Below are positions 5,296-62,168 of a stretch of DNA of 64,000 nucleotides, in pieces. The position numbers were made by a program, and so were the translations under genes. The stretch is from the IMG/VR virus record IMGVR_UViG_3300049043_000112, positions 1 through 64,000 of that record; one strand, given 5' to 3'. Each line of letters opens with the position of its first letter. Positions within the stretch are counted from its first letter, which is position 1. The notes under the pieces are model-generated. The model saw only the letters and a program-made list of their open reading frames with translations, made no database searches and was not told where the DNA came from.

Positions 5296-5476
5296 TTAGG
5301 GAGTAATATCTTTTGCACCCTTTTTCTTTAGTTGCTCTTAAGCTTGAAGAAGAATAAGTGAAAGAATACCGTTAGATTTTACTTTTGGGTTTGCTCCTAG
5401 TGCTTCTGAAACTGCAAACAGAACGGTTGCAATTAAAGTCTTGATTAGCAAGACACCAAGCGACGAGTGCTGACAT
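5296..5476 (-). CDS. Small membrane protein (holin-like), with a +1 indel (~5447) and an in-frame TAA (5338-5340)
   Basis: MSALVAWCLANQ-LIATVLFAVSEALGANPKVKSNGILSLILLQA*EQLKKKGAKDITP; CCTAAATA late-like box at 5506-5513. Not in the ORF track. Confidence 0.65.
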
Positions 5477-5515
5477 AATAACCTCCTATAAAGAGTATCC
5501 TGTCCTATTTAGGAA

Positions 5516-7007
5516 TCAGTCTCTTGGAGAATGCATCATATCTTGTGCTCTTTGAGCAGCAGCACGACGCATTGCTACTTTTTGTTCTGGCGATCTAGGT
5601 CCACCATATTCACCAGCGGTTGGTGGTTTCTTACCAGGAACTTTTTTTTCACCTCTTGGTTTAACACCCATTCTACCCGTACCCATAGATTTAGCAACTA
5701 ATTCAAATGCTCGGTCACGGGGTTTTCTTGGAGTTTCTGATACCTTATCTTCCTTTCTTCTTTCATCAATTTGTTCTACTTCTTCAGCAGCAACCATTAC
5801 AATAGGATTTCTTGCTCCTCTAAATCTTGCAGCGGTTTTAGCAAGATTTACTGCTGTTGGAATTGAACGGGGATCCATTTTTTTATCTTTAATCCCCATT
5901 TTATCTTTATCTTCACATCCACCGTCTGCTGCTTCTTCTACTTTTTCAGGAAGACCCTTATGCTTTGTTTTAGCAAATTTCTTTGCTTCTTTCTTGGTCA
6001 TACCTTTAGCAGCTGCTGCTACTTCTGGAGATGCTGCCTTTTCACCTTTCTTAGCAGCATAAACCATTCCCATAAAACGCTGCTGTGCTTTACTGAGTGC
6101 CTTCTCTGATAATACAGGTCCTTCCATTTCATGGTGAGCAACTTGCATATAAGAAGTTACATTTCTTCCAACACCAGTTCCAGGAACTTCTGGATTAAGT
6201 TTAACAGTGTTTTTACCCTTCATCACATCAATTTGCTTATTATTTGCATCTTGATTAGATTTTTCATCATTTACTTCACCAAGAAATTCTTCAGATACAC
6301 CACCCTTCTTTGCAATTGCAGCACCACGAACATCTCTACGATGCTTCAAATACTTATCAGTCTTATCTACTTTACCATCATTATTTACGTCAGAATCTTC
6401 TTTGCCAACGGATCTAATTTTTCACCACGCTTTGCTCTTGCAGTCTGTTCACCTTTTTTCTTTCACCCTCATAAGGTTCACCATATCCCGTCATTTCAAC
6501 AGATTCAATATTTGGATTGGCACGAAGAGCACTAATCTTATCACGAGTTGCGTATCTTACATATGAACGACCATCTTTACCAGTAACTCTTACCTTATAC
6601 TTTCTATGTTCGGAAGACTCTAACTTTTCCATATAAGTTAGAACAATCGGTTCTTCTTCTTTTTGAACACCTTCAACAAATACCTTATATAATGCAGTTG
6701 CTACACTATTTGAAGCAAACTCTTCGATGTTAAAATCTTCTGCTTGCATTCCACCTTTACCAAATAACTTCTGCTTTACTATAGTCTTTTCTTGCTGACT
6801 CATATTACTATTTTGCATATATTGCGAATATGCCTGACGAAGAGGAAGTTCTTCTCTTCTGGCACGATAACGAATATCGTAAATTGCTTGCTTTGCTCTT
6901 TTTTCGGGAGACTTTCCACCTGCTTCCTTTTTATCTCCAGCAGCATCTGCATCCGCTGCAGGAGCGTGTTTTCTTGCTGGAAGCTCTTCAGCAATATGTT
7001 TTTTCAT
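5516..7007 (-). CDS. Modular, charged late protein (~497 aa; probable head-internal protein), two -1 indels near 6455 and 6410
   Basis: Joining 6414..7007 and 5516..6349 gives ...[46 protein letters not shown]...; CATAAATA at 7040-7047. Confidence 0.7.
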
Positions 7008-7016
7008 GAGTAAACT

Positions 7017-8322
7017 TTACTTCTTACTTTTTCTATACTTATTTATGAAATCAATTCCGTAAGCGACTCCACCAGGTTGAAGATTTTCTTTCCCAGTACC
7101 AACTGCTCCTGGAGTTTGTTTTGCAGCGTATTTGAAATATCCAGTAGTTCCAATTAATGTATTAGGTTTTCCAGGTTGTCTATACATTTTATCCATTTTA
7201 ACTTCAGTATATTCAACCAAATCTTTAATCCAAGATTTAAACATTTGACCAGATTCTGTTACACAGATAAGATAATTGGTACCTCTACGAATAATACGTC
7301 CTATTAATCCAGTATTTAAGTTTTCTACTTTTTCACCAAGTTTAAAAATTGTTTCTGTAAGATAATTTTCACGCAGATTTTGATAATCAAACTTTGGAGC
7401 AATTTGCCATATGTCCCAACCTTCCTTAACATTCATTGAACCACGAAGAATATTGAATAATTCTTTTGCCTCTGAAGGTTTGACTTCGGGAGGAAGACCG
7501 GATCTAAATGTTTTAAAATCTCCTTCTGCGGCAGCAAGTCTCATTCTTGATGCAGACATTCCTTCTACACCTTTTGCATCAGGGTCCCTATCGCCAGATG
7601 AAACGACTTCAATGTTATCAAAGTTATAAAGTTGTCCATTATATTGGTTAGAAAGTTTTTCAAACTCCTTGACTCTATCTGCACCACCAATAATTCTTAC
7701 ACCAGCATATCCATTATTATGTGCCATTTTGAGCACGTCAAATATAGTTTTAGTATTTGCATCATTAACAATATTTCCTGCATGATTTGGATAAAACTTT
7801 TGCATATAAGCAATCTTTGTATCGGGATCTAATGGATTCTTTTTCTTGTCCTGACTTCTTGAAGGAAAGATAAGATACTGCCCATCCTTATCCTGTGATG
7901 CTGCTTGTGCTGCAGTATCCATTAATTGTTGATGCCCAATTGTCAGGGGGATTGAAACGTCCAAAAGCAACAGTAAGAGTTCCTTTTGTTTTAGGTACAG
8001 GAAGATACTGTGCTGGCGGTTGTTCCTGGGATGCTTGTTGTTCAGGTGCTGGTGCTTGTTGTTGCGCTGCTGCTTGCTGCTGAACTAATGCTGGATCAGG
8101 TATATCCAGGAGATGCAATTGTTTTTTCTTTTTCAGTCTGTGCTGGATCTTTTCACCAACTCTCTGTCGCTTATTATAAAACTTTAATTTTCCACCTTCT
8201 GTTTTTGCTACGAATTCTCCCTGCTTATCATACCATCCACCATGACCGTCTCCAACAAGTCCAAGACGCTGTGCTTGCTGAGAGGCAGATGCTTCTGTTA
8301 TGAATTGGAAAAAACTTTTCAT
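7017..8322 (-). CDS. Cytidyltransferase-like (HxGH superfamily) nucleotidyltransferase, +1 indel near 7945
   Basis: Joining 7888..8322 and 7017..7970 restores TVAFGRFNPPTIGH; also GGADRV and MSASRMR. N-terminus is MKSFFQFITE. Confidence 0.85.
7040..7047 (-). promoter_or_regulatory. Late promoter variant CATAAATA
   Basis: 33 nt upstream of the ATG at 7007. Confidence 0.6.
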
Positions 8323-9487: not shown

Positions 9488-9489
9488 AA

Positions 9490-11983: not shown

Positions 11984-12540
11984 TATTTGTAATGTAGATA
12001 TGCGGTCATGATATACTTTGGTCCACTCATAGGTGGTTCTCCACGATGGGGATACATCCAAAGTGGTGGAAACATTATTAGTGTTCCTTTTTTAGGTTGA
12101 ACTTCGAAATCTTTAAAGACTGTTTTACCTCCACTTCCAACATCATTCAAATACCACATAAAAGACAAAAATCTTCTAGCAGTATCATACGTCACAACAT
12201 CAACGTGTGTATCAAATTAATCTTTGCCACCAGGATTATACTTTTTTATACGAAATTGTTCAAGAGCATGTTCTTCTGGAAAGACACGCTTATCAACATA
12301 TTCATAATACTTATCCCGATATTCAAATATCTTTTTAATGATATGACTATGAACTTGTTTGACTTCAGGAGTTAATTCCTTATGCTCAGTTAAATTAAAC
12401 TGAGTAAAATTAGGTTTACCATCATTATCATATCGTTCGTGTTTATCTGATGTTTGTTCAAAGAGTGAAATTAAAAAATCACAGACTTCTGGTTCTAACC
12501 CATCTTCATAGACGTGAATTAAATCATTAAGTTCAACCAT
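11983..12540 (-). CDS. 2OG-Fe(II) oxygenase (prolyl-hydroxylase-like), in-frame TAA at 12217-12219
   Basis: Read-through gives D*FDTHVD (HxD) ... LSFMWYLNDV..GG.T...PPLWMYPHRG...KY; both track pieces are in the same frame. Confidence 0.88.
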
Positions 12541-18131: not shown

Positions 18132-18508
18132 TTTGTTCCTCCAGTTTCAAATTTCGATTTAATAAATGTTAGTTGTTCTTTAGTAAGAATCCTCAAAGAT
18201 TGTTTTGCCTTCTCATTACTAAAACCATAGTAACGTTTAACATAATCAAGGTCTTTGATTTTATCTTGACGGAGCCAGGGAGAAAATCTCTTCTTTTTCC
18301 TCAGACTATTTATAAAGAAGTCATATTGCATCTTTTTTGGAAGGAAATTATACCGATTCATTTCATTCGCAAACATAATACAGTCAAGGTGCCCAGACAG
18401 ACAACGATTGATGATATAGGGAGGATATTCCTTCTCAAGTGAAGGATCTTCTTCAATCAGATTCTGTTTCGTCTGATTGATTGAGTTTAACCAGTCCTTC
18501 AATTCCAT
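18128..18508 (-). CDS. gp62: Clamp loader small subunit
   Basis: MELKDWLNSIN...YPPYIINRCLS...RKKKRFSPW; true start at 18508. Confidence 0.92.
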   Translation of the reverse strand: MELKDWLNSINQTKQNLIEEDPSLEKEYPPYIINRCLSGHLDCIMFANEMNRYNFLPKKMQYDFFINSLRKKKRFSPWLRQDKIKDLDYVKRYYGFSNEKAKQSLRILTKEQLTFIKSKFETGGTK

Positions 18509-19327
18509 AATTAAAAAGCAGTAGTTCTTTACGTTGTTTTTGCTCTCGCATATATTCACCAACCGAACGCATCGTATAAGTTAAGTCAAACTCAGCAGCG
18601 TTCCAGTTCTTAAAACGGTCTTTTACAAGTTGGTCAGAGTTATAACTGACTAACTGATCCATATTGTTAGCATCGCAATCAGCAGCAAACTTATCGTGAT
18701 CAAATCCTTTGTGCATTGATCCCTTTCTGCCATAGAGATTGTCCTTAATATCATAAGGAGGATCGAGATACATAAAAGCAGTCTTATCTCCATCCATCAG
18801 ATAATCATACGAGTAATTAGTTATACGCCAATGCTCAATCAGTTTAGAATACGCAGGCAGTTTTTCGATACCCCGCATACTGAAGTTGGCGTTGGAAGCT
18901 TGTTCTGAAAATGATGAACTCTCCGTAAGACCACTGAAACTGCACTTATTGACAACATAGAAAGCCACAGCACGATCAAGATTCGACAGAAGTGGTTCAT
19001 TGATTCTGCTCCTTTGATTGGAGAAAAAGTTCTCTTGCCTTATCTGGAGTATTATACTTTGACTTAAGATTCTACAAGTTTATCTTTAAGGTCAGGTCCA
19101 AAAATCTGGAGTTGTTGCCAGAAGTTAACAAGAGGTTCATATAAATCATTTACCCAGATATCTAGGCTGGGATATTTTTTCGTGATATGAATTGCAACAC
19201 TTCCACCACCAAGAAAAGGTTCTCGGAATTGCTTATAATTACGGAGGTCTGGAAAATATGCGTCCATCTTGGTACAAGCACGGGACTTGCCGCCTGGATA
19301 CCTCAAAGGGGTTTTAAGAGATTTCAT
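18453..19327 (-). CDS. dam: DNA adenine methyltransferase (Dam/D12 class), two +1 indels (~19070, ~19005)
   Basis: TPLRYPGGKS, motif I FREPFLGGGSV, motif IV YLDPPY, terminal ELLLFNY. Confidence 0.9.
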
Positions 19328-37353: not shown

Positions 37354-37361
37354 TATTTATA
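37354..37361 (-). promoter_or_regulatory. Late promoter TATAAATA
   Basis: Exact match upstream of gp22. Confidence 0.75.
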
Positions 37362-37363
37362 AA

Positions 37364-38014: not shown

Positions 38015-38016
38015 TT

Positions 38017-38559: not shown

Positions 38560-38729
38560 TATTCGTCATCTCCTTCTGTTTGTTCTGCATTACCAAACAT
38601 CACGGATGCAATCTCTGGACGAGCAGCATCTACTTTTTCAGCAGCTTTAGCATATAGTAATTCTTTAATTCTGCTGGAAACATCAGAAGCTGATCCATCA
38701 GTTGCAATCAAATCGATAAGTTCTTCCAT
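38559..38729 (-). CDS. Small prohead core protein (gp67/gp68 position)
   Basis: MEELIDLIATDGSASDVSSRIKELLYAKAAEKVDAARPEIASVMFG; TATAAATA at 38742-38749. Not in the ORF track. Confidence 0.7.
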   Translation of the reverse strand: MEELIDLIATDGSASDVSSRIKELLYAKAAEKVDAARPEIASVMFGNAEQTEGDDE

Positions 38730-38756
38730 AAAAGTAGTTTATATTTATAAGATTAT

Positions 38757-46893: not shown

Positions 46894-48619
46894 TTAGTTG
46901 CAGTTCCAACGACGAAGGGCTTTGTTAATTCTTGAATCTGGATCTCTTGCAGTTTTAGCAGAAGTTAGTTTGGATTTCATTCCGGACATACGTCGGCAGA
47001 AGTTTGCACGACGCTTTGCTCTTTTACCAGTTGGTTTCTTTTCGGTTACAGCAGTTTGTAACTTAGAACCTGGATTCTCACGTCGATAAGCGTCTACTGC
47101 TTTTTGACTAAGACCATCAGTTTTATCCTGACGATTTACTTTTTGCCAATCTTCCATAAATTGACTAAAAGTTTTATTTTCTTGAACTCTACCCATAATT
47201 TGATCAATCTGCTGCTGTTGTTTTTCATTTCTTTGTTTAATTTTTTCAGCAGTTACTTTTGCTTTATCATATACCATTTTACCTGCCAGTGCAGTTCCTG
47301 CTGCCAGTCCAGCACGAATACCCAATCCAATCAGAGGATTTTCATTTAATTCATTAGACTCTTTCATTTCTCCACTATCTACATAATCTGCTGCAGTATC
47401 AATATAATCTGCTGCTTTAGTAATTTTTGATTGAACCCAAGCCTCAATATTTCCTTCTCCCTTCATTTTTTTACGAAGTCTTTTTGCTGCAGAAATAATT
47501 GTAGAAAGTTCAGAGCGAGCCATTGAATACTCATGATCATAAGACTTCAGGAAAATTTCCAGGATGAACAGTTGCGATATTATATTTTAATTGGTTTGTT
47601 GTTAATGCAGATGGTCTAGAAAACATATCCCAATACTTAGATCCATACTTACATTCATCACGAGTTTCATCTTTTTTACATTTAGGGCAATATCTAATCA
47701 TTCCTTGCTCCTCTTTTACTGGTATGCAATTTGGAACCAATTTTTTACCTTTCTTTTTCATTCCTTCTTCCTTATACCCATCCCAACAATCTTCTGATTT
47801 TGTTCCCCAATTTGCAGCACCAACTTTACGACATTTGACCAATGCTCCTGAAGCATATGCACTTGGCCAGACATCATATCTTGACTTAACTTTTTGGTAA
47901 CAGGCATCTTTTTTACCACTACCTTTACCTGGTTTATCTTTAACTTCTTGTAAATCCATTTCTTCAGTTCTTACGTTAGTTGGTTTTGCTCCACCAGTTT
48001 TTTCTGGTTGATTAGGATCTAGACGATTTTTTCTTCTTCTTGCCTTTTCCTCTTCTTCTGGAGATAAATTTGCTGCCATTTTAGAACTACCGCATTTTGG
48101 TGTAGAAGTTTGACCTGGTTGGCGAGCACATGGTTTTCCTGCATATTTGCCTCCAAGTTGAACCCAACCTTTTTTTCCATCAGAAGACTTTGATTTGCCA
48201 AACCAGTCATGAAGACCTTCATCACCAGAAGTTGTTTCTTCTTTTACATCTTTGAACTTTTTATGATGCTTTTTAGCATCAGATTCCATTTTTTTCAAAC
48301 GAGTATAATAATCTGGAATTTCATCAAGATGTTGAAGAGCAATATCAGTTGCTAAGTCTTTATCCTTTGTATGCTCATGTTCAATTGGAATACCCATTTC
48401 AAGTTGCTTCTTTACAAAAGAAACTTCAAGACGATGTTTTTTTGCAATCTGTTCAACCGATTTATGAGATTTCAATTCGTGCATTTCATTGAAAGGAGAT
48501 TTTGATTGAGTTGATTCACCTTTTGCTCTTTTTTTACGAGCAGCACAGTGTGCTTTTTGAGAAAATCCCTAAGGACTATCACAGTTTATTGATCTTTTGT
48601 ATTTGTCAGACCAACTCAT
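46894..48619 (-). CDS. Modular basic/Cys-rich late protein (~574 aa), in-frame TAG at 48569-48571 and +1 indel near 47547
   Basis: MSWSDKYKRSINCDSP*GFSQKAHC is in frame with 47537..48484; FPE-SYDHEYSMARSEL joins 46894..47523; TCTAAATA at 48643-48650. Confidence 0.7.
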
Positions 48620-49060: not shown

Positions 49061-49857
49061 TTAAATATCAGTTTGTCTTGTAGGACTAAATTCCTTACCG
49101 TCAAAGAACATTTCAATTGACTCATCAAATCCAAAATCATCAGTTGGTTGTGCATCAATTGGATCGGGAGTTACAGTATATCTCATCTCTCTCTTTGCAG
49201 TCTGAGTATCTGTACCAGTATAATAATCAACTTGAACCTTACGAATAAGACCATCCGTACTTTCAGCAATAGGACCAAATAGATATGTTTTAGCAGTAAA
49301 ATTGAAAGTATAAATCAATATTCTTCTAGATGAAAAATCTCCTTCATAATCATCTGTAAAAGAAACATTATCAAGAACAACTGGAATATCTCTTTTTCTC
49401 CAATCGAATCTACTAAATCAACTGTTAACGTAAAAGCAGGTTGAAAATATGGCAGAATTTGTTCAACAACTTGTAAAGCATCATCTTGAATTTTACTCAT
49501 CAAATTAAGTTGAAATCCAAGATTATAAGGAACAGGAAGGTATACTTTTTTAAGATTATTACCATCTTGTACTTTAAAAGTTTGCGTTATATTTGCTTTT
49601 CTTGTAGGATCGTATTGTATTGATGTCATCTCAAAAGACAATCGAGGAAGAGTCATTGCAATTGGTTTATTTAATTCCGACTGTTGTTCAATCCTAGCAA
49701 GAAATTTTTGCATTGGACCATAAGCTAATGGAACTTTTATCTGACTAATACTGCCTCCAGAAGAATCTTTATGGCGAATATTAATATCATTAAATAAAGT
49801 ACCAAAGGAGATAACAGTTCTTCTAATAATTTCGTGGTAATAGTAAGTACCTAGCAT
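49061..49857 (-). CDS. gp15: Tail sheath stabiliser / tail terminator, -1 indel near 49395
   Basis: YYHEIIRR, VPLAYGP.QKF, LPRLSFE, QIVEQILPYFQP-like segment, YTFNFTAKTYLFGP. Confidence 0.92.
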
Positions 49858-51248
49858 TAAAATGTACCAAATGGATTTGACTCTGAAAAATCTATAATAT
49901 TGTCCGCTTCAGTTTCAATTTGTTTATTTTCACTATATTTATCATATTCATCCCACTCTTCAAATGATGAGACTGCATACCTTGCAGATGATGCTGCTCC
50001 AATAATAAGTTCCCCTGGATAAAATCCTTTAATTGTCGCTCCAATACTTACAATAGAAACCTTAAGTACATTAGTATCTTTATCCCAAGACTTAACTCTT
50101 GCGGTCGTATAAGACCTTGTTCCGGTAACAATTTCATTAAATATGTAAGTTCCAATTCCAGAAATAATCGATGGAGATTGAATACTTACAGTAGGTGCCT
50201 GTGTATATCCAATTCCTGCATTAGAAATACGAATATCAGATACTTGCTCACTGGAATTTATGGCGGCAATTCCAATAGCAGTTTGTCCAGTTCCTACAGA
50301 TCCCACAATTGTTACTGTTGGAGTTTCTTTATAACCATTTCCATTATTTGTTACAGTAAAGTTTATAATTCCATTCGCAACTGTTTCTATGGAACAAGTT
50401 GCAATTGCACCAGCACCACCGCCACCAGTAATCTGAATTGTAGGTGCTACAGTGTACCCTGAACCAGCGTTAGTAAGCAGGATTTGACTTACAGACCTAA
50501 CTCCACCAATTGCTGAAGTAATCGCTACAGCAGACGCATTAGTGCCTCCTGCAGGGGCAGTTGATATAGAAACAACGGGGTTTGATGTGTACCCGTATCC
50601 ATCATTATTCAAATAAATTTGTCTGATATATCCTGTTCCTATTGTTGCTGTTGCTGCAGCCGTTGTACCAATACCAATTAAATTCAAAGTTGTAATATAC
50701 CCTTCATTTTGAATTGTCTTATCAATTTCATCAATTGAAGTATCGATAACTTCATCCTTATATTCGAAGAGTTCACATTTTAGTTCATAGACATATAATT
50801 TACCCAATTGATAAAATGGTTGTTCATGCTCTACAAATTTAACTTCAAATAATCTTTGACCAAGTGGAAAATAAATTAAATCTCCTTCACGAGGTCTTGA
50901 TGCTAATTCAATTTCTGGATCATTTTCATCTAAAAAGGGGGCAATAAAATCTTCATATCTTTCTCTTGATATGACTAAACTTACTTCATCTTTCAAACTT
51001 ATTCCAAATTTTGTTAAAAGATCTCCCTGCCCACTGTATCCTTCATAGTTATTAATATACGCTTCAATAGCGTAGTTATCATCAAATTTAGATGATGAAA
51101 TTTCTCTTAAAATAGTTTCCCTTCTAACAAATTTTCTTGGAATATAGATAACTTCAACCCCATAAATTTTAAGCTGCTCATTAATCAACTCTTGAACGAG
51201 TCTTTGTTCGTTTGGTGATCCTTGAAGAAAAAAGGGATTAAGTGCCAT
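49857..51248 (-). CDS. gp14: Neck protein with an internal repeat insertion
   Basis: MALNPFF, GVEVIYIPR, LASRPREGDLIYFP, FSESNPFG; four GxGY-x3-P-x-V-x-I repeats. Confidence 0.9.
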   Translation of the reverse strand: MALNPFFLQGSPNEQRLVQELINEQLKIYGVEVIYIPRKFVRRETILREISSSKFDDNYAIEAYINNYEGYSGQGDLLTKFGISLKDEVSLVISRERYEDFIAPFLDENDPEIELASRPREGDLIYFPLGQRLFEVKFVEHEQPFYQLGKLYVYELKCELFEYKDEVIDTSIDEIDKTIQNEGYITTLNLIGIGTTAAATATIGTGYIRQIYLNNDGYGYTSNPVVSISTAPAGGTNASAVAITSAIGGVRSVSQILLTNAGSGYTVAPTIQITGGGGAGAIATCSIETVANGIINFTVTNNGNGYKETPTVTIVGSVGTGQTAIGIAAINSSEQVSDIRISNAGIGYTQAPTVSIQSPSIISGIGTYIFNEIVTGTRSYTTARVKSWDKDTNVLKVSIVSIGATIKGFYPGELIIGAASSARYAVSSFEEWDEYDKYSENKQIETEADNIIDFSESNPFGTF

Positions 51249-52091
51249 TATCCAATAAAATCGTAAGGAGGAAGTTCATAATCCATCGACATTCTCTGTC
51301 TGATGCTCTCTAATTCTCTTTCAGCATCATCATATATTTCTCTACCATTCAATTCAATTCCACCAGGAAGTTTAACTCCCCTAAATTTAATTAAATTCTG
51401 ACCCCACTGACGTTTCATCAACGCAGTCAGATATTTTTTTAAGAAACTATCATTATAAACTTTGGTGAAATCATTTGGATCTGAAAATTCTGTAACAATC
51501 AATAACTATAAAAGTATCTTTTTCTTTCGCTCCCCAATCAATATCAAGATACAATCTATTTTGTCTTTTATTAAAACGTATCTGCTTGTCTGTTGATAAA
51601 AGAAAATCAATATCTTCAAGATAAGTTTTTACCATTGCATATTGTAAGAGTTCAACAGAGTTGAAATAATACAAGTCATTTAAGAAAAGTTGATATTTAA
51701 TACTGAACATTCCAGCGGAAATTGAACTAGTATCAAATTTAAAAACTTTTTCAATGCCTATAACACTATCAGGAACTTGAATAAAGTTTGTGTTTTCATA
51801 AAAATTGAATGATGTTGTCCCAATTCCAGAAATTGTCGTAGTTCCAGTTGTAGTTACAATTCCAACTCCATTTGTATATTTTGCTCTTGCTCTATCTAAA
51901 TCTGCTTGTGTAATTTTGTACTTTAAGTACATTCTTTCAACACCATCAAAGTGTCTTTCATGAAAATACTGTAAAGCATCATCAACTAAATCATCAATTT
52001 GTTCGTCTGATATATTAATTTCTAATACCGGTGCCCCCAGTCTTCTGAGACAGTAATCGATTAATTCTTGTCTACTTGTAGGTTTTGACAT
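51248..52091 (-). CDS. gp13: Neck protein, +1 indel near 51485
   Basis: LIDYCLRRLGAPVLEIN, KRQWGQNL.KF.GVKLPGG.ELNG. Confidence 0.93.
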
Positions 52092-52637
52092 TAGTACAAT
52101 CCTCCATCGATTGCCCCTGACCAGGTTGGAACTCCAGCGCCATTAGTTGTCATTATATAGTTGCTATCATCAATTCCATTTTGTGGACTTTGAGTGGATA
52201 CCATTAATCCAGAAGAATTAAAATATGGCATACCATTTGTATAATATGGACCATAATATAATCCACCAGGTAATAGTAGTAATACCAGTTATTCTTGCAT
52301 TTCGTGCAGTAAATTCATCAAAGAAAATATCATCATTTACATATAAATCACCACCAATATAAACATCATTTCTAAATGTTGATACTCCTACAAAAGTAGA
52401 AACACCTAAAACATTAATTCCTGTATTTGCAGTTAAGATACCTGCAAATATTGCACCATCTCTAAAAGTAGCAAGTCCAACTATTGTTGAAATTCCACTT
52501 ACATAAAGTTCTCTAACTGAAGCGATTCCACCGATTACATTTTCAGCACTAACTGCTCTGCCTCCAGCAGATCCAGAAAGGCTGGAAATAACTTTAACGG
52601 CATTTTGTTGCCCAACTCGGACTTTAATATCTGCCAT
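52091..52637 (-). CDS. Hypothetical structural protein, +1 indel near 52265
   Basis: MADIKVRVGQQNAVKV...GVSTF repeats; the corrected tail ends AIDGGLY* at 52091. Confidence 0.6.
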
Positions 52638-53368: not shown

Positions 53369-56300
53369 TACGCTAGGGCAATACTTCTAAGATCTCTAAA
53401 CCTTGGAGCATATGCTTGTGATCTTCCTGACATGACGAGTTTAATTGTATATCCAGTGAAACTTCCAAGATTGTTAGCACTAAATTCATATTCTAAAAAT
53501 TAATCCTTTAAGCTTGCAGGAACAAACACATCTGGAAGTCCACTGTTTTTGGATGGATCAACAATATCCAAATATCCGTCTTGATTATTGTCAATAGTTA
53601 AATTATTGTATCCAGGGAATAGTTCAAATGCTTGACTTACTTCACTCGAATCGGGTCTAATTAAACTATAAAGAACTCTAAAATCTGCAGTTGAATCTCT
53701 ATAAGCACTTAATATAACTTTCAGAGATGTTGCTGGTTGTTGCAGTTTTACGGTATTTGAAACATAAATTGATGCATGTGGATCACCAATAATGTTATTA
53801 ACTCTATTATCTAAAGTATAATCTGCAATTGGAGAATTTAATCTGTTACTTATAAGTTGTGCAGAAGACTCCTGCCAGAAAATAACAGGAGAAACGTTTT
53901 GATCGGTTGTTGATAAATCAACTTTAACGGTAAACGATTTATTTCTCAATACAGATCCAAGATATGTTTGCTCGTTAATATTTGAGCATACAATTCTAGT
54001 CGAATTTAGATTATTTGCAACTCCTATTTCTACAGGTTCATAACCTAAATCTACAAAAGAACTTTCAGTTCCATTTACACTAGTTCCAGATATGGTTCTT
54101 ATTTGAGCAAGACTAGAAGTTACTGCAGAAGGATTGACAACTGATATTTGTGGAATAATGGTATTAAACTGAATGTTTTCGGAAGATCTTACTTCAGTTC
54201 CGCCGCACAACGCATTGGAATTAAATGATAACTGAGGAGCACTAGTAATTGATCCATCTGTTGATCTATTAGTTACATTAGCATCAAATGCAAATCTATC
54301 AACTTCAATATAGTAATTATCAATATCAATGCCAGTATCGCTAATATCATGTGTTTTGTTAATTCTTCTTAAGGATACTCCACCAAGTTCATACTTATAA
54401 ACTTGTGTATTGGTTGGATAAGTTAGAACTAGCGTGGAATCAATACCTCTAGTAATTCCATTTAATGTACCACTTCCTACAGAAGTATATTTAATAATTT
54501 CATTTTCAATCTTAACAAATCCAGGATTTGTTGCGCTTACAGTAAGACCTTCAAAAGTATTGAAGTTAGATGTAGAAGCAACACTAATTGTCGTGTTTGT
54601 TGATGTAATTGGTTGTGCAAGAGATGTGGGTATGATGTCAGTAATTGCATTTGAAATAGTTATCTTGTTGGTATTCGCATACATTCCATGATTAAAGTGA
54701 TTTACTCTAAAGAAGTTTCCAGCGTTAATACCACCAATTGCAGTTGATGAGAGGACACTTGTACCAGCAATTGAAGTGGCATTTCCAGAAGTATCATAAT
54801 AAACTAAGGTTGAAATACCTGCCGTTGTGAAAGAATTCCCTTGAACATTTGAAAGGTATAATGTATCAAGACCTGTAATAGAGTTAATTGTAATTCTTGC
54901 GTTTCTTCCAGACACTGAAGAAACAGAAGATGTGACAATTCCAACAACATCACCAACAGAATATCCATTTCCTGGACTTACAATTGTCGCAACACCTACA
55001 ACACCACTAGTAGCAGTGATGTTCAGAGTCAATCCTGTTCCATTACCAGTGATTGCGTATGTTGAAACTACACCATTTGAGTAATTTGTTCCACCAGTGG
55101 TTATTCCAATTGTTGCAACAGAACTTCCAGTACCAACAATATAGCCATTAAGTATATGGAGTTCCAACTGAAGAAACTTTTCTACCTGTAGTTAAGATAC
55201 CGATATTTGTTGCTGAAGTTGTAGTTGTAATTCCAACTTTAAGTTGTCTGGGTAATAAAGTGAATGGATTTGAATCTAATTTTGGAACATATCCATTACT
55301 TTCGTTTAGGGTTGGATTATGGAAGAATGCACTTCCTGTAGAAGAAACAAATTTAGATTTATACAGTTTAAACTTTAAATCTTGATATTGATTTGCTGTC
55401 CATATAGATCCATTTTGTGATTTGAATAGACTTCCTAAAGCAAACTGTCTTGAATATCGAATGCTTTGTGAGTCTGGTAAGGTTGAGGTTTCAATAGTCT
55501 TTTGACCCATTTCAGCAATCCAAACTTCATATTGAATCACTTTGGGGTGCAAGAAGAACAATTGCATATTCTAATCCTGGTGCAAGGTAAATAGGATGAT
55601 CAAATGTAACTTTTGTTGCAACCGACGCATTTTTTGAAATTTGGATATCACTTGGTTTTAGTGTTACTGGATTTCCAAGAATTTTTGTTGTTGGCGTTCC
55701 TAGTTCAACGGTTCTAACTTCAACAGTAAGTGGTGCATTGCCAGGATCTTTATTTGCAAAATACAAATCAACTGCAGTTAAAAACGCACCATTAACGTCT
55801 TCATTTGGAGTGTTTCCATTTAAGTTGTCTGTAGATGCACCAACAGTAAATGACTGCGCTAATGGATCAACATAATAAATTGTTGTTGTAGATGTAATTG
55901 TTCTTTGTTTTTGCTGCCAAGTTCCTTCAGACTTATAAATTGTCTCTCCACTTGAAATCAGATTACTTCCAGGAAGAGGAACTTCGTTAGTTGAACTAGA
56001 TGTCAACTTGTAAACTTTAGATCCTGTTGCAATTCTAATCGCAGGAGTTGGATTTGTATTTGGATCTTTGAGGAAAAATGCTCCTGCTAAAAATCCATTA
56101 GAAATCACTAATTAATCTAAGATCTTTTACATAAGCAACTGCACCGCTTGTTTGCCCAACAAGTTTCATACCCAATGCTAAATATCCAGAATACAAACCT
56201 TGTGCTTCAGAACATAAAGATTCCGTATCAATATTTAAAACCTTAGATGATGCACTGTAGGACGCTGGAATATTTTCTGTAGTCGAATATGGGTTTGTCG

Positions 56301-59300
56301 TATATGTAACTGATGGATCACTATATGGACCTTCTTTATGATTTGCTTTTGCAACTCTAAAACTAATTGCCTGACTTAAAACTCCAGAAGTAGTATTTAC
56401 ATATCCAAAAACTTTTTCACCGACTTGGAAAGATGATGAAGCACCGTAGTTTTGAAGAGTTAAGTCCGTAGCAATTTCTACAAGTTTTGGAACAAAATCA
56501 ACCAATCCATTTCCATCTAAGAATTGGTAATATCTAGTTAAAGGTCTTAAGTTTACTGCTTTAAATCCAGTATTTCTGGATCTCATATATAACTCTTTTC
56601 CAGTTGCAACAACTTGATCAACGGTTGAAGTGCTAGTGCTTTGCCCAACAACTTGATAACGTCCAGTAGCATACAACCATACCCAATTTGTTTGGTTAAC
56701 ATTTACGTCTGGAAGACGAATAGTTCTAACCCAACTATCACTTGCTGGACTTAATTTAATAGTTCCACTATAAGAGACAATATTGAATGGATTAACGTTT
56801 TCAACCTTAGTTGCAAATAACTGTTCAATCCAACCAATTGAATTATATTTTAATGTGAGAATTTCTCCAGTTTTTTGAACATTTGAATCAAATAGAGTAA
56901 AGTTTTGGGATAAATCTAATGTCTCATCTGTAACACTTTCGGCAGAAACTGGTTTAAGATTTATTGTATTTTTACTAGTTTGTGTTATTAATTCATCATT
57001 ATCAGTATCTACTTCAATTTTAGATATTTCTAAATTAATTAAATCTGTATTTTTAAAGTCGTCAACAAAGAATCCTGTTTTAAAGCGACTTAATCCTTGT
57101 GCATCACGTATTTGGAGTGTTTGTGTATTAAGTTCTAATAAAGATAAAGAAGTAACTCTTTCTAAATTGTTGACTCGATTTTCAATCTTGCCAATATCAC
57201 GCATCGTATATCTCTTATTATCCACAAGAGTTATACCTGCGTCTTTAGGATTGTATAAGTATGGTGGTAATGTGATTGTAGCAATTTCTATGGAATCGCT
57301 TGGTTTTGCTGGTTCTTTTGGTTGTACTGCTGGAGTTCCTTGAACCACTGCAAATTTGCCATTTTTATCAATGAAAAGTTTATCAATTCTTCCAAGATAA
57401 AACTGATATCCAATTAAAGCACTTTCATTGGGGGACATTAAAATTTTTGGTTCTGATCCAAAAGATCTTGAAGAAAAATCAAAAGGTGATGCTGAAGTGC
57501 TTGTAAATTGAGAAACTCTTGGTCTAAAGTCTAGAGTATCAGAAGATCTAATATTATTTTTACCAATTAATGGAATGTCTGAAGTAAATCTTTCGCCATC
57601 ATAACTATTAACAGTAAATACATCTCCGGTATCACTTGTAGGTACAGAATAATAGTCAAAAACTACTAAAAGTTGTCTTGATGGAGCACTTTCTCCAGAA
57701 TTTCGAACAATTTTTGAATAATCATAATATTGAATCTTTTTGCCCTTTATCTAAGGTATATTTTGTTGTTATATTTTTAAAACTTCCAAGAGTAATAGTA
57801 GAAATTGTAGTTTGAATGTTAGATTCTTCAAAAATTACCTGTTCTCCTTCAGAGAGAGTATTTCCATTAAGATAAACAATCCCTAAATTGTTTGTGGAAG
57901 GTTTTGAAACAATTCTGGCGACTGCGTTACTTGTTTTTCCAATAATATTTTCTCCAATAATTGCATTACTATCGACATTTACTACAGAACTAAATGAAAG
58001 TCTAGTTGGAACTGGAGCATTTGTATCAAGAGATTCATAAATTGCAATTACTTTAACAACATCTGGATAATTTAAACTAATTTCTTCGTCCTGAACTCTT
58101 AATCCATAATATTGATTATAAATTAACCCATCATTAACAGAAGTGTTTACACCAACACCAGATTGTGGATTTTTAGACAAAGTTATATTAATAGTTTTAC
58201 TTCTATTAAACTGCTTGACTTTGCTTTGAATAGAATTTTTTACAAAAGTGGCGTTAATTACTGAAATGGATTTGTTGGAAATATTTGTAAATGTTACTTG
58301 AGAAGAATTGCCACTTAAAGCAACTTTATCTGAAGTTAAATTTTCAATTGTTCCATCAGCATAAAAAATTGAATATCTTTCTTCGTCAAATGCTTCAAAT
58401 CTTGCAGAAGATGTATTAATTCCAAGATTAAAATTACTGGTGCTGACTGTAAGAGATCCACCAGAAGGAGTTAAAGTTCCTGTTGATTGTGCAGTAAACG
58501 TAATTGTTGAAGTGCTTAAATCTGTGGAAGCAATATTTGAATCTGGAAGTTGTGCATACAAAAATCCCTTTTCATCGTTTAGAATTTTTGTTTCACCTAG
58601 AGAGTATGATCCACTATATTGAGAAGTAGGTAATGCACCATCACAAACACCGTTTACACTAGTAACACTAGCAAGTGTAAGTGATAATCCAGTAGAAGAG
58701 ACAGAAGCAACTCTATTATATGTTTCAGTAGATATTCCTGCTCTTTGATATCTAACTATATTATCTGTTTTAATTCCGACAAAACTAAATGGGGAAGAAA
58801 CTGTTGCTGTGCTAACTCCAGCACTTGCAGCAGTAATTGTGATTGTTTCTGGTCTTAAAGTTTTACTTAGTTGTGTATCTGCTATAAAAGCAGTACTAAA
58901 TCCTGATATAGAAGTTGGTTGATGAACCAATCTAACATCCTCTATACTATAAACCTTAATAGAAGATATAAATCTAGAGTAATTTTCTGATCCATTGATT
59001 AAAATCTGTTCACTAACTGAAAATGTTCCAGAAGTTTGACTTAAAAGAACAGCAGACCCACTAATGGAAGCAACATACCCACTTGCACCGCTACTTTTTC
59101 CTTTTATGAAAGAAGATGTTGGTAATTCAGTTGAAGTTAAAGATTGATTTAAAGTTAATTCAGTATAAGTTTGAACATCATATAGATACAAGTCCCAGTT
59201 AGTAGTTTGATTTGAATATGCAGCATCAGTTACGTTAAATGTATAAACCCTTGCAGAACCAACGGTTGAACCTGCAGCAACAGTTGTACTGTCTTTTCTT

Positions 59301-60565
59301 CTACCTTGAAAATATACGATTCCTTTTTGAACTGGAGCACCAGATATATTATTAACTCTAACTAAATTCCCCATTTCAAAAGGAATATTTACAGAAGAAA
59401 CTGTATTAGTTGTTCTTGGTTTTGAAACATCTAAAATTTCAACTCCAGTTTTTTCTACATCATATCCTCTCACATAAGCTTTACCTGGAGACATTTTAAA
59501 GCACATCAAATCATCTGATGGTGTGTTTCCTTGCTCTGTTTTTTCTGTATCAAAGAATAAACCATCATTACCAATTCTATTATTTAATGAATTGTTTAAT
59601 GAAAATTGAAAAGGAGTAACGACATAATCTCCAGATTCATCATAAGTTCTTTGTGCTAAGTAATCTTTTATGTTTGAATATGTAGATTTGGTTTCAATCT
59701 TCTTAATTGCGCCATTTTGTACTCTAAGTAACTCTACAAAATCAATATCATTATTATCAGTTAAAAGTCTTTTTGTTAAAGTTAATGAAATTTTAAACCT
59801 ATCCGCTCCAGGGGCAGCATAGTTTGTAAAACCTTTTGCATTATCATACAAACTAGAATCATCTCTAGCAGTGATAATTTCTTCATTAATTCTTAATCCT
59901 ACTCTATAAGAAGGAGTATTTGTATAATAATCTAAAATAATTGTTTGTTTTGGAACTCTTACGAAAGTTCCTCTAATAAAATATACACCTTCACCAATTG
60001 ATGCTGCAAATCCAATCGAAGTTGAATTGGAAATGATTGTGGTGGCAAAAGGTGTTCCAGATGTAATTGTAGTAGATTGATATGTAATATTCTCTTCAAT
60101 GTATAAAGTTTCATTATCTTTGAAAGAACTTACCTCAAAATTAGAATCTAGAGCTAAGATATTTTACATATAAGGTTACATATTCTACATCAGAATTTGG
60201 AAGTTGAACTAACTGAATATTTGCAGTAACTCCAGAATCGGTTCCTATAACTTTTTTACCTACAAATTTTTCAATGTAGTTTGATATATCAACACCGTAC
60301 TGTAATTGATTTAATTTAACTGCATAAAACTGCCCATCGTATGCAATATTTCCAGGGATCACCATTGATCCGTCTTTGAAAATATGACTTCCGAACGATT
60401 CTACTTGATCTTGTAGAATTGATTGTAATGTGTTAAGTTCACGAGCTTGAATTGCCCTTCCTGGATTAAATAGGACCTTGTAATAGTTCTTATCCCTTGC
60501 ACCCACATTCACTTCCGAAAAATCATCAAAATATGGATTTATATTGAGATTAGTTTTTTGACCAT
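53368..60565 (-). CDS. Giant virion structural protein (DUF4815-type, ~2400 aa), broken by about six indels and an in-frame TAA at 53500-53502
   Basis: NLNINPYFDDF...YYKVLFNPGRAIQARELNTLQ; NYAAPGADRFKI; DNKRYTMRDIG; FKTGFFVDDF; DPLAQSF; DLKFKLY; ends APRFRDLRSIALA*. The pieces join with 1-nt corrections. Confidence 0.85.
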
Positions 60566-60568
60566 CTT

Positions 60569-62168
60569 TTAGAATTCCAGGATAATTTTAACGTCTTCTT
60601 TTTGTCTTAAACTTCTAGAAACCGTAGGTCTGTTATCAATGTAAATTATTTCTCCAGACTTATTATTTATTTGTGGTTTTGCAAGACCATCTGTAAACTG
60701 AACTCCCAAATTGATAATTCGATTGGAAATAGTTACTTTATTATCAGAAAATGTAGTATCAATACTTGCAACAAAACCATCTCCGGTAACTTGCAAATTG
60801 CTATCAGACACAAAATCTATTGCACTACCTGAAGATGTTCCTGAAGTATTGAAAAATGAAGAAACTCCAACAAAATCTTGATATGTGGAACCATTACCCC
60901 CATTAAAATATAAAGAACGATCTTTGTAATACTTTAAAACTTTCGTTTCATCATCATATGATGCCACATATCCAACTGCTTTTTTACCTGTATTTGTATT
61001 AATTTGTTGAATTCTTGTGCCAACACTTATCGCAGCATTTGACGGTGTAACAGATGATAATTTTATGGCGTATAAAGAAGAAAAATCGTTTTCATTATAA
61101 ACTGTTGTATTAATTCCTGTAGAATCATAAACAGTAGGATTTTTTAAAATCCCAATCTGAGCAAATTTAGCGTCAATTGGAAAATTCTTTGTAGAATCAT
61201 CAAATCGAGCATAGACTAAAATTCTATCTGCACCTAACTCTTTGTAAATATCAAATCCGTGACCCTTAGAAGGTGGAATAATAGGAACTAATTCTGCATA
61301 TGTTGAAGGGGTATTAGCACCTGTAGTTCCCAAGTCAACTAGAGCATATGTATAATTTTTTCCTCCAGAAGTTACTACAGCATCAGTAATTTTTCCTTGA
61401 GTTGAATCAATTTGTATAGAAACTCTACCACCAGATCCGTCACCAACTAAATTGCAAGATTGACCATTTTGTAAACTGTATCCAACTCCACCATTTTTTA
61501 CATAAACTTTTTTAATTTGGTTTTCATTTAGAGTTGAATCGCCATTTTCTCGTACTGCAACAATTTGAGAATCTGTACTTGTCTGCCAATTATTTGGAAT
61601 AGTAATATATTCTGTGGTATCAAATTTTACAATATCACTAGGAGATGTTGTATATAAGTATTTCCAAGTATACCCATCACTTAATTTGGATGGTTCTAAA
61701 TCTGTAAAAGTTGGTTCTACTTGGGATGCATTTTCCAGTTGTATTAATTCCAGTTGACCCATTATCAACACAAATATAAACTCTATAATCAGAATTAATT
61801 ACATAATAATTTGCATCATATAATCTCATTGCACCAGTAATTGGAGATGGTGATAAAATACTATAATCTGGTCTATACATTTCATATCGTTGACCAGAAA
61901 CCCAATTAATTTTTCTAACTACTCTTCTAATATTAGCACTAGTGATTTTTTTACCAAATAAAGCAGTTGACTCATAATGATTTGAATAATCAATATTATC
62001 TATCGGATTTGGAGGTGTAGAATTCCAATTAGCATCTCTTCCAAATCCAGATGTTGTTGGATTGGATAATCCAACAAAAACATAATATGAATTTGCAGAC
62101 TTCTGAACTTCGTCTATAAAAGTAGACGCATTCAGTATTCTAAATTAATCTGTTACAAATGCAGACAT
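60569..62168 (-). CDS. gp8: Baseplate wedge subunit, in-frame TAA at 62145-62147 and +1 indel near 61735
   Basis: MSAFVTD*FRILNA; ANYYVINSDYRVYIC; DGYTWKYLYT; IYIDNRP.VSRS.RQKEDVKIILEF. Confidence 0.88.

What the first reader, a model, noticed from the sequence alone, without database searches (positions are those of the whole stretch)
5296..62147. Six in-frame stops in otherwise intact frames, each one T-to-C away from a Gln codon in a TCA context
Seen: GCT-TAA (5338-40, membrane peptide), GAT-TAA-TTT (12217-19, 2OG oxygenase), TTT-TAG (34574-76, RlpA-like), CCT-TAG (48569-71), GAT-TAA-TTT (53500-02, giant structural protein) and GAT-TAA-TTT (62145-47, gp8 codon 8). Every stop follows a T and the frame continues cleanly past it. 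Restoring C gives CAA/CAG. Three share the identical 9-mer GATTAATTT. Inference: C-to-T at TCA, most likely a base-calling artefact at modified DNA. Alternatives are real damage from a TC-preferring deaminase (DddA prefers TC in dsDNA; APOBEC3 prefers TCW) or context-dependent Gln readthrough. At 34576 TGG is equally plausible as the original codon.
Basis: partly seen in the sequence, partly recalled or inferred. Interest (0 to 1): 0.6.

Follow-up and report, generated by a model that had tools for sequence, protein, structure and literature searches.

The report
Base-calling errors in a cyanophage assembly
The six stop codons are real letters in the record, but they are sequencing and assembly errors in a low-accuracy assembly of a T4-like cyanophage. 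They belong to a much larger set of motif-bound G-to-A/C-to-T miscalls and one-base indels, so they are not biology.

Summary
All six in-frame stops are at the stated coordinates, on the minus strand. Each follows a T, and three sit in GATTAATTT.

- **Other damage.** The frames are not otherwise intact. Relatives show at least 22 one-base frameshifts in the same 64 kb, in terminase, portal, scaffold, UvsW, gp8, gp13, gp15, the Dam methylase and a 2398-aa structural gene.
- **Second assembly.** The same phage was assembled from another JGI sample (236,046 bp, 99.9% identical). It differs almost only at such lesions. Site 1 reads CAA (Gln), site 2 reads TGA, and sites 3-5 are unchanged. Ten of 16 window frameshifts are absent there, and it has lesions of its own, including a new GATCAA-to-GATTAA stop.
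- **Motif.** Of 18 transition differences, 9 are T[G/A]AG and 3 are [G/A]ATC (p about 1e-15).
- **Direction.** In all 9 differences that change a residue and have relatives, the conserved residue matches the G/C allele. The two stop differences point the same way.

This fits the purine/pyrimidine "RA/TY" ambiguity described for native methylated DNA on nanopore. The phage encodes two adenine methyltransferases.

Gln is shown at site 1 and supported at sites 5 and 6. It is only predicted at site 4, unresolved at site 2 (Arg, Trp or Gln) and unlikely at site 3 (Trp). There is no suppressor tRNA and no recoding. Reads could not be examined.

The parts
5338..5340 (-). TAA in a 51-codon membrane-peptide gene (5296-5451, TTG start). 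The original codon is CAA (Gln).
   Evidence: The second assembly reads GCT-CAA-GAG and JGI calls the 51-aa gene intact there. Three of three relatives have CAA. On the + strand the context is T[G>A]AG.
12217..12219 (-). TAA in the 2OG-Fe(II) oxygenase gene (11983-12567). The original codon is unresolved: CGA (Arg), TGG (Trp) or CAA (Gln).
   Evidence: PF13640 spans the stop. Relatives have R 54, Q 28, W 3, L 1, mostly in a GATC context. The second assembly reads GAT-TGA-TTT at the same codon.
34574..34576 (-). TAG at codon 18 of a gene of unknown function between the major capsid and tail-tube genes (34007-34627). The original codon is most likely TGG (Trp).
   Evidence: Relatives have F 9, W 5, N 4, S 6 and never Q, in EF[W/F] contexts such as GAATTTTGGAAT. 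The second assembly has the same TAG. No Pfam family matches, so the 'RlpA-like' label is not supported.
48569..48571 (-). TAG at codon 17 of a DUF5661 protein gene (47537-48619). The motif model predicts CAG; homologues have Lys, Ser or Asn.
   Evidence: Relatives have K 15, S 7, N 1. The + strand reads CCCT[A]AGG, the T[G>A]AG error motif. The second assembly has the same TAG. PF18905 matches.
53500..53502 (-). TAA near the C-terminus of the giant DUF4815 structural gene (53368-60569; 2398 aa in relative L002). The original codon is CAA (Gln), by GATC to GATT.
   Evidence: Relatives have Q 43 and E 24. The nearest, L002 and L003, read AAAGATCAATTC. The second assembly has the same TAA. It has a new stop of the same kind at 53901, GATCAA to GATTAA.
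62145..62147 (-). TAA at codon 8 of baseplate wedge gp8 (60569-62168). The original codon is CAA (Gln), by GATC to GATT.
   Evidence: Relatives have Q 53, K 8, N 2. The nearest, L002 and L003, read ACAGATCAATTTAGA. PF09215 matches both gp8 pieces. The second assembly could not be reached at this site.
61725..61735 (-). A +1 frameshift in gp8: GGAAAATGC here against GGAAATGC in relatives.
   Evidence: 48 relatives bridge the shift.
55145..60153 (-). Five frameshifts cut the giant structural gene into six frame pieces, at about 60149, 57733 (GATTCAAT), 56104 (GATTTCTAA against GATCTTAA), 55535 (GATTCAAT against GATCAAT) and 55148 (CTTAATGG against CTTATGG).
   Evidence: with 61-74 relatives at each shift. 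The 56104 shift is absent from the second assembly; 55535 and 55148 are shared.
49384..52270 (-). Frameshifts in gp15 (about 49398, an A-run), gp13 (51483, TTTT[C]AGATCC) and the next gene (about 52270, TTA[C]CTGG).
   Evidence: gp15 (265 aa) and gp13 (280 aa) are intact in the second assembly.
44128..45096 (-). Three frameshifts in the large terminase: 45090 TTTT[A]GAGA, 44880 TTAT[-]AGAA and 44135 GAG[A]ATC.
   Evidence: The terminase is a single 565-aa gene in the second assembly.
36815..39464 (-). Frameshifts in the head scaffold gene (about 36815) and the portal gene (about 39453). Both are shared by the two assemblies.
32642..32901 (-). Two frameshifts in the UvsW helicase.
   Evidence: UvsW is a single 454-aa gene in the second assembly.
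18456..19327 (-). D12-class (Dam-family) N6-adenine DNA methyltransferase gene. It is itself split by an indel, TAGAATCTT here against TAGATCTT in relatives.
   Evidence: PF02086 matches in two pieces, both over the cut-off. The intact relative ORF matches phrog_56, DNA methyltransferase. Frameshift.
4347..7968 (-). Further frameshifts at 4347 (T-run), about 6410 and 6464, and about 7945 (C-run in a cytidyltransferase-like gene).
   Evidence: The 4347 and 6464 shifts differ in the second assembly.

Best explanation
The window is the first 64 kb of a 236,016-bp metagenomic contig, JGI 3300049043 Ga0506816_0818. It is a T4-like cyanomyophage (Kyanoviridae-like), and its consensus carries systematic base-calling and assembly errors.

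The errors take two forms:
- G-to-A miscalls, read as C-to-T on the other strand. They occur at a G directly 5' of an A, above all in TGAG/CTCA and GATC.
- One-base indels at the same motifs and at homopolymers.

When the miscalled C is the first base of CAA or CAG, or the miscalled G lies in TGG, the consensus shows an in-frame TAA or TAG. The six stops are the nonsense subset of this error class. The same class also gives E-to-K, D-to-N and S-to-L changes and at least 22 frameshifts in this window.

The likely physical cause is inferred, not shown. It is N6-methyladenine at GATC and at a TGAG/CTCA-containing site in native DNA read on a nanopore platform, where a methylated base blurs purine/purine and pyrimidine/pyrimidine discrimination at the neighbouring position. 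The phage genes themselves are intact.
For: **1. A second assembly differs at the lesions.**
- JGI 3300045937 Ga0496538_0224 (236,046 bp) is 99.9% identical over about 34.5 kb compared. It has 35 differences, nearly all at lesions.
- Site 1 is CAA there and site 2 is TGA.
- Terminase, UvsW, gp13 and gp15 are intact there but shifted here.
- Portal and gp46 carry extra shifts there, and a new GATCAA-to-GATTAA stop appears at 53901.

**2. The errors are directional.**
- In 9 of 9 assembly differences that change a residue and are covered by relatives, the conserved residue matches the G or C allele. This holds whichever assembly carries the A or T allele.
- The two differences that create a stop in one assembly (5340 and 53901) point the same way.

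**3. The errors are motif-bound.**
- 9 of 18 transition differences are T[G/A]AG, against a background of 1.35% of G positions (p = 6e-13).
- 3 of 18 are [G/A]ATC (p = 1e-3). For both motifs together, p = 1e-15.
- Seven or more frame-breaking lesions sit where relatives have GATC. The forms are GATC to GATT, GATTC and GAATC.

**4. The genome could not work if the lesions were real.** At least 22 frameshifts hit essential genes: portal, terminase, scaffold and baseplate.

**5. Adenine methyltransferases are present.** The phage encodes two: PF02086 at 18456-19327 and PF05869 at 97562-97900 of the record.

**6. The literature describes this error class.**
- Lohde et al. 2024 (PMC11610573) describe methylation-induced ONT errors as A/G or C/T ambiguities with minimal motif RA/TY. 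They vary between runs of one genome.
- PMC12392509 reports consensus errors inside GATC.
- Wick et al. 2019 (PMC6591954) show motif and homopolymer errors dominating ONT consensus error.
Against: - Read-level C/T mixtures, strand bias and the sequencing platform are therefore unknown.
- **Shared lesions.** Three of the five stops that could be compared (sites 3, 4, 5) and six frameshifts are identical in both assemblies. By itself that would also fit real mutations. I attribute them to reproducible systematic error, because the shared frameshifts would inactivate portal and scaffold.
- **Assembly independence unknown.** The two assemblies may not be fully independent. The project and pipeline are unknown.
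- **Methylation not demonstrated.** Methylation at TGAG/CTCA is not shown, and a sequence-specific weakness of the base-caller without any modification would give the same picture.
- **Errors are partial.** Many GATC (513) and TGAG sites are called correctly, so the error is not deterministic.
Confidence: 0.9

Rival explanations
1. The stops and frameshifts are real mutations. The contig would then be a decaying or defective cyanophage genome, or a consensus of defective variants.
For: Sites 3, 4 and 5 and six frameshifts are identical in two assemblies from two samples. Site 2 is a stop in both, though a different one: TAA here and TGA there.
Against: - The two assemblies are 99.9% identical, yet they differ almost only at frame-breaking positions. 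Each is intact where the other is broken.
- Lesions hit portal, terminase, scaffold, gp8, gp13 and gp15, which is incompatible with a replicating lytic myovirus.
- The lesions are concentrated in two 4-mers with one direction of change, which is unlike decay.
Confidence: 0.04
2. The changes are real C-to-T damage or editing of the phage DNA by a TC-preferring cytosine deaminase of the DddA or APOBEC type.
For: The direction of change is always C-to-T/G-to-A. The changed C follows a T at sites 1, 2, 4, 5 and 6.
Against: - One-base insertions and deletions occur at the very same motifs: TTTT[A]GAGA, GAG[A]ATC, GAT[T]CAAT. Deamination cannot produce them.
- The context is two specific 4-mers, TGAG/CTCA and GATC, rather than TC in general.
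- A change must be present in most molecules to enter a consensus, yet it differs between two 99.9%-identical assemblies.
- Site 3 needs a change on the opposite strand.
Confidence: 0.03
3. TAA and TAG are read as Gln, either by context-dependent readthrough or by a recoded genetic code, as in some phages.
For: Gln is the homologous residue at sites 1, 5 and 6. Three sites share one 9-mer.
Against: - TAA ends 34 and TAG ends 5 of 72 long minus-strand frames in the window.
- None of the 23 tRNAs has a CUA or UUA anticodon.
- Homologues do not have Gln at sites 3 and 4, and mostly have Arg at site 2.
- The second assembly has CAA at site 1 and TGA at site 2.
- Readthrough cannot explain the frameshifts alongside.
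Confidence: 0.01
4. The errors are systematic base-caller or polisher errors at TGAG and GATC k-mers that occur without any DNA modification.
For: The same motif-bound, directional pattern would result. No modification was measured here.
Against: - GATC is the canonical Dam site, and the phage carries a D12-class Dam gene plus a second Dam-family gene.
- Published RA/TY ambiguities disappeared on PCR-amplified DNA, according to Lohde et al. 2024.
- Relatives assembled from other data keep these k-mers intact.
Confidence: 0.2

Closest known systems
Methylation-induced purine/pyrimidine ambiguity in Oxford Nanopore consensus sequences (Lohde et al. 2024, Genome Res, PMC11610573; minimal motif RA/TY)
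   Same: - Errors are A/G or C/T choices at a base next to an A: T[G/A]AG and [G/A]ATC here, which read as T[C/T]A on the other strand.
- They are motif-bound.
- They affect only a fraction of motif copies.
- They differ between assemblies of the same genome.
   Different: - The platform and chemistry of this record are unknown, and no reads were seen.
- The motifs here (TGAG/CTCA and GATC) are not those listed for the bacterial isolates.
- Many one-base indels accompany the substitutions, so overall consensus quality is lower than in that study.
Dam/Dcm-motif and homopolymer consensus errors in nanopore assemblies (Wick et al. 2019, PMC6591954; PMC12392509 for GATC)
   Same: Lesions sit at GATC, at CCTGG (52270, 39453) and in A, T and C runs.
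   Different: Wick et al. quantified Dcm, not Dam. No C5 methyltransferase was found in this phage, so the two CCTGG cases may be chance.
Stop-codon recoding in phages (TAG to Gln in some crAss-like and Lak phages)
   Same: In-frame TAG or TAA where homologues have Gln at three sites.
   Different: - Only six such codons occur in 64 kb.
- TAA and TAG are used as ordinary terminators.
- There is no suppressor tRNA.
- The codon is not stable between two assemblies.

Membership tests
Methylation-induced nanopore base-calling artefact (RA/TY ambiguity) | Substitution errors are purine-for-purine or pyrimidine-for-pyrimidine. | tested here: met
   18 of the 20 single-base substitution differences between the two assemblies are transitions. 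In 9 of 9 residue-changing differences covered by relatives, the conserved residue matches the G or C allele. The two differences that create a stop point the same way.
Methylation-induced nanopore base-calling artefact (RA/TY ambiguity) | Errors concentrate in short sequence motifs with an RA/TY core. | tested here: met
   9 of 18 are T[G/A]AG and 3 of 18 are [G/A]ATC. For both motifs together the binomial p is 1e-15 against genome background. Five of the six stops are T[C>T]A on the coding strand.
Methylation-induced nanopore base-calling artefact (RA/TY ambiguity) | The same genome gives different error sets in different runs or assemblies. | tested here: met
   10 of 16 window frameshifts and 1 of 5 stops are absent from the second assembly, and one stop is changed. 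The second assembly has lesions of its own.
Methylation-induced nanopore base-calling artefact (RA/TY ambiguity) | Reads show mixed calls with strand bias, and the errors vanish on amplified (unmethylated) DNA. | not testable with these tools
Methylation-induced nanopore base-calling artefact (RA/TY ambiguity) | The DNA carries a modification at the motif. | tested here: inconclusive
   Two adenine methyltransferase genes are present. No TGT/DpdA, QueC, FolE, PurZ or C5-methyltransferase gene was found. Their target motifs and the methylation itself were not measured.
Stop-codon reassignment or programmed readthrough to Gln | A suppressor tRNA or equivalent decoding factor is present. | tested here: not met
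   ARAGORN finds 23 tRNAs, none with a CUA or UUA anticodon. tRNA-Gln has UUG.
Stop-codon reassignment or programmed readthrough to Gln | The reassigned codon is not used as a terminator and recurs in frame in many genes. | tested here: not met
   TAA ends 34 and TAG ends 5 of 72 long frames. Only six homologue-supported in-frame stops occur in the window.
Stop-codon reassignment or programmed readthrough to Gln | The in-frame stop is a stable feature of the genome, and homologues have Gln. | tested here: not met
   The second assembly has CAA at site 1 and TGA at site 2. Homologues lack Gln at sites 3 and 4.
TC-specific cytosine deaminase footprint (DddA or APOBEC3-like) | Only C-to-T/G-to-A substitutions occur, in a general TC context, without indels. 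| tested here: not met
   Indels occur at the same motifs. The context is restricted to TGAG/CTCA and GATC.
D12-class (Dam-family) N6-adenine DNA methyltransferase (gene 18456-19327) | Match to Pfam PF02086 over the curated cut-off. | tested here: met
   Two pieces score 42.7 and 40.2 bits against a cut-off of 22, covering profile positions 1-62 and 84-249. The intact relative ORF matches phrog_56 at 2e-92. GATC specificity was not tested.

The most novel reading that the evidence does not exclude
The error pattern may be a footprint of the phage's own epigenome. The virion DNA of this uncultured 236-kb cyanomyophage would carry N6-methyladenine, or another purine modification, at a TGAG/CTCA-containing motif as well as at GATC. 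The two phage-encoded Dam-family methyltransferases would write these marks. The mis-called positions would then map a methylation motif that has not been described for T4-like cyanophages.
Probability: 0.3. Interest if true: 0.35.

Novelty: not a real feature. Interest (0 to 1): 0.1.

Why it matters
- **Data quality.** This IMG/VR record, rated 100% complete, has roughly one frame-breaking error per 2 kb in the window, plus hidden missense errors such as E-to-K at TGAG.
- **Consequences for use.** Gene calls, protein clusters and any inference of pseudogenes, recoding or readthrough from this record, and from its sister contig, are unreliable until it is polished.
- **A general lesson.** In-frame stops that follow a T and revert to CAA or CAG, together with GATC-to-GATT, GATTC or GAATC changes, are a recognisable signature of modification-linked base-calling error.
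- **Possible biology.** The only biological content is indirect. The error motifs hint at which sequences are methylated in the phage DNA.

Tried and rejected
- **Site 6 in the second assembly.**
  - The flanking genes either differ between the assemblies or start with GTG/TTG, so an exact-protein look-up by reference fails.
  - A degenerate-pattern scan of metagenome contigs found nothing, probably because near-identical records are withheld.
- I did not build a Gln-substituted gp8 fragment with a TAA=Q code for a look-up.
- **Second contig as a handle.** The genome search does not hold it.
- **Hypermodified-base hypotheses.** A 7-deazaguanine system (TGT/DpdA, QueC, FolE), a Z-genome (PurZ/adenylosuccinate synthetase) and a C5-methyltransferase gave no gene matches in the 236-kb record.
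- **Deterministic loss of GATCAATTT.** Rejected, because five intact copies remain in the record.
- **4-mer conservation against relatives at 80-86% identity.** Too noisy to isolate GATC loss. A directional test shows only a modest excess of G-to-A in GA contexts, for example TGAG 28 against 11.
- **Other candidate in-frame stops.** Positions 17626, 17650, 33497, 16887, 9989, 5219, 6422, 51276 and 35040 came from the stop-to-stop ORF comparison. They lie upstream of start codons or in off-frame ORFs and were dropped.
- **Literature.** A search for the JGI sample and contig identifiers found nothing.


Full report
**What the window is.** The window is bases 1-64,000 of a 236,016-bp virus record, identified as JGI sample 3300049043, contig Ga0506816_0818. 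Every gene in it lies on the minus strand. The content is that of a T4-like cyanomyophage:
- gp23 capsid, portal, sheath, tail tube, large terminase, gp8, gp13, gp14-like neck protein and gp15;
- UvsX, UvsW, UvsY and a gp41-type helicase;
- 2OG-Fe(II) oxygenase and a giant DUF4815 structural protein.

The nearest cultured relatives are Synechococcus phages S-SKS1, B3/B23, DSL-LC03 and S-PRM1. G+C is 37%.

| Site | Coordinates | Coding-strand context |
|---|---|---|
| 1 | 5338 | GCT-TAA-GAG |
| 2 | 12217 | GAT-TAA-TTT |
| 3 | 34574 | TTT-TAG-AGA |
| 4 | 48569 | CCT-TAG-GGA |
| 5 | 53500 | GAT-TAA-TTT |
| 6 | 62145 | GAT-TAA-TTT |

Each follows a T. Third-position T is 41.6% here, so six of six has p about 0.005, or about 0.03 if the three identical 9-mers count once. 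Homologous proteins from IMG/VR contigs and cultured phages align on both sides of each stop. Other candidates from my scan fell upstream of start codons or in off-frame ORFs, so these six are the window's homologue-supported in-frame stops.

The frames are not otherwise intact. I translated all long ORFs of about 290 related loci and laid them on the window. This gave at least 22 places where one relative's protein continues in another frame, each supported by 3 to 74 relatives. Nucleotide alignments pin most of them to single-base indels. The broken genes are:
- large terminase (3 shifts), portal, head scaffold and UvsW helicase (2 shifts);
- gp13, gp15 and gp8;
- the Dam methyltransferase and a cytidyltransferase-like gene;
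- the giant structural gene, which is one 2398-aa ORF in relative L002 but six frame pieces plus the site-5 stop here.

A lytic myovirus with this genome could not replicate.

**Residue at each stop in relatives.**

| Site | Residues in relatives |
|---|---|
| 1 | Q (CAA) in 3 of 3 |
| 2 | R 54, Q 28, W 3, L 1, nearly always after GAT in a GATC context |
| 3 | F 9, W 5, N 4, S 6 and others, never Q; local contexts EF-F-GF or EF-W-NPF |
| 4 | K 15, S 7, N 1, never Q |
| 5 | Q 43, E 24; nearest relatives (about 90% aa identity) read GATCAATTC |
| 6 | Q 53, K 8, N 2; nearest relatives read GATCAATTT |

**The decisive comparison.** An exact-protein look-up found a second assembly of the same phage in another JGI sample: 3300045937, contig Ga0496538_0224, 236,046 bp. 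I obtained about 34.5 kb of it, opposite window 3349-6509, 11563-12579, 24702-46105 and 48337-57278. It is 99.9% identical, with 35 differences, and those differences are the lesions:
- **Site 1** reads GCT-CAA-GAG, and the 51-aa gene is called intact.
- **Site 2** reads GAT-TGA-TTT, a different stop at the same codon.
- **Sites 3, 4 and 5** are unchanged.
- **Frameshifts:** 10 of the 16 window frameshifts in the overlap are absent. Terminase is 565 aa, UvsW 454 aa, gp13 280 aa and gp15 265 aa.
- **Its own lesions:** an extra portal shift at 40254, shifts in the gp46-like gene, and a new in-frame stop at 53901 where GATCAA became GATTAA.

Two near-identical genomes that are each intact where the other is broken cannot both be correct. 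The lesions belong to the assemblies, not to the phage.

**Direction and motif of the errors.**
- **Direction.** For every difference that changes a residue and is covered by relatives, the conserved residue matches the G or C allele, whichever assembly carries the A or T allele. That is 9 of 9. Examples are E conserved 47/47 against K, S 66 against L, L 53 against F and D 8/8 against N. The two stop-creating differences point the same way.
- **Motif.** With all transitions written as G/A, 9 of 18 are T[G/A]AG and 3 are [G/A]ATC. TGAG holds 1.35% and GATC 1.17% of G positions, so the binomial p values are 6e-13 and 1e-3, and 1e-15 for both together.
- **Indels at the same motifs.** Examples are TTTT[A]GAGA, TAT[G]AGAA, GAG[A]ATC, GAT[T]CAAT and TAG[A]ATCTT. 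Others lie in A, T or C runs.
- **Hidden missense errors shared by both assemblies.** Conserved columns show E-to-K at gat[G>A]agg and tat[G>A]agg, D-to-N at ctc[G>A]atc, and S-to-L/F at gat[C>T].

**How the six stops fit.**
- **Sites 1 and 4.** On the coding strand these are CT[C>T]A, which is T[G>A]AG on the + strand.
- **Sites 5 and 6.** These are GAT[C>T]AA, which is [G>A]ATC on the + strand.
- **Site 3.** It sits on TTTT-A-GAGA, the same 10-mer as the terminase lesion at 45090. The simplest explanation is T[G>A]GAG, that is TGG (Trp), which five relatives have.
- **Site 2.** TAA here and TGA in the sister assembly need at least three miscalls in total. The most parsimonious originals are CGA (Arg, the majority residue, GATCGATTT in five relatives) or TGG (Trp, in the closest relative by local identity). 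CAA would require an A-to-G change, against the observed direction.
- **Overall.** Gln is shown at site 1 and well supported at sites 5 and 6. At site 4 it is predicted only by the motif model, while homologues have Lys, Ser or Asn. It is doubtful at site 2 and unlikely at site 3.

**Likely cause.** This part is inferred. The pattern has five features:
- purine-for-purine or pyrimidine-for-pyrimidine confusion at a base next to an A;
- binding to short motifs;
- hitting only a fraction of motif copies;
- variation between runs of one genome;
- homopolymer indels alongside.

It matches what is published for native methylated DNA on nanopore. Lohde et al. 2024 describe A/G and C/T ambiguous positions with minimal motif RA/TY, not all of which become assembly errors (PMC11610573). 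PMC12392509 reports consensus errors within GATC. Wick et al. 2019 show methylation-motif and homopolymer errors dominating consensus error (PMC6591954).

The phage encodes a D12-class Dam-family methyltransferase at 18456-19327, itself split by a GATC-to-GAATC lesion. It also has a second Dam-family gene (PF05869) at 97562-97900 of the record. No genes were found for 7-deazaguanine insertion, a Z-genome or C5 methylation. The platform is unknown, and methylation at TGAG/CTCA is unproven. A pure base-caller k-mer weakness would look the same.

**Rivals.**
- **Recoding or readthrough** is rejected. TAA and TAG terminate 39 of 72 long frames. None of the 23 tRNAs is a suppressor. The codons are not stable between the assemblies.
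- **A TC-specific deaminase** fits the direction but not the indels at the same motifs, nor the restriction to two 4-mers.
- **Real decay** fails on the reciprocal intact/broken pattern and on the essential genes hit.

**Limits.**
- Site 6 could not be compared in the second assembly.
- The independence of the two assemblies is not known.
- Only about 34.5 kb of the sister contig was compared.

**Verdict.** Nothing here suggests new biology, beyond a hint at which motifs are methylated in this phage's DNA.

Noticed in passing
window 4347-61735, minus strand: Relatives show at least 22 single-base frameshifts. They cut terminase, portal, scaffold, UvsW, gp8, gp13, gp15, the Dam methylase and the giant structural gene into pieces. 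The record's gene calls are therefore fragments.
   Followed up: yes
L298, L300, L303, L307 (JGI 3300045937 Ga0496538_0224, 236,046 bp): This is a sister assembly of the same phage from another sample. It is 99.9% identical and offset by about 7.7 kb, and it has its own set of frameshifts and a new stop at window-equivalent 53901.
   Followed up: yes
window 18456-19327 (-) and G000:C1:97562-97900 (-): There are two adenine methyltransferase genes, PF02086 (D12 class) and PF05869 (Dam family). Their target motifs are unknown. There are two error motifs, GATC and TGAG/CTCA, but no assignment of enzyme to motif was possible.
   Followed up: partly
whole record G000: Several 4-bp palindromes are strongly avoided. 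Observed/expected ratios are GGCC 0.17, AGCT 0.27, CATG 0.28, CCGG 0.29 and GATC 0.55, as expected for avoidance of restriction sites.
   Followed up: no
window 34007-34627 (-): The site-3 gene lies between the major capsid gene and a tail-tube-like gene. It has homologues in DSL-LC03, S-PRM1 and about 38 IMG/VR contigs but no Pfam family. The close relatives L090 and L091 stop aligning at 34647, just upstream of it, so it may be a variable insert. The 'RlpA-like' label is unsupported.
   Followed up: partly
window 53368-60569 (-): A giant DUF4815-containing structural protein, 2398 aa in relative L002, lies directly downstream of gp8. It is conserved in more than 500 IMG/VR contigs.
   Followed up: partly
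G000:C1:212757-220731 and window 9407-9563: The record has 23 tRNA genes, most in one cluster at 212-221 kb. tRNA-Leu(UAG) and tRNA-Ala(UGC) are in the window.
   Followed up: no
window 39453 and 52270: Two indels sit at CCTGG (a Dcm-type CCWGG site), yet the phage has no C5-methyltransferase gene. This may be chance or host methylation.
   Followed up: no
window 27553-27560 (-): The gp46-like (SMC_N) gene appears to end early at an extra T (TAC[T]TGAGC) that is absent from the sister assembly. My cluster criterion missed this frameshift.
   Followed up: partly
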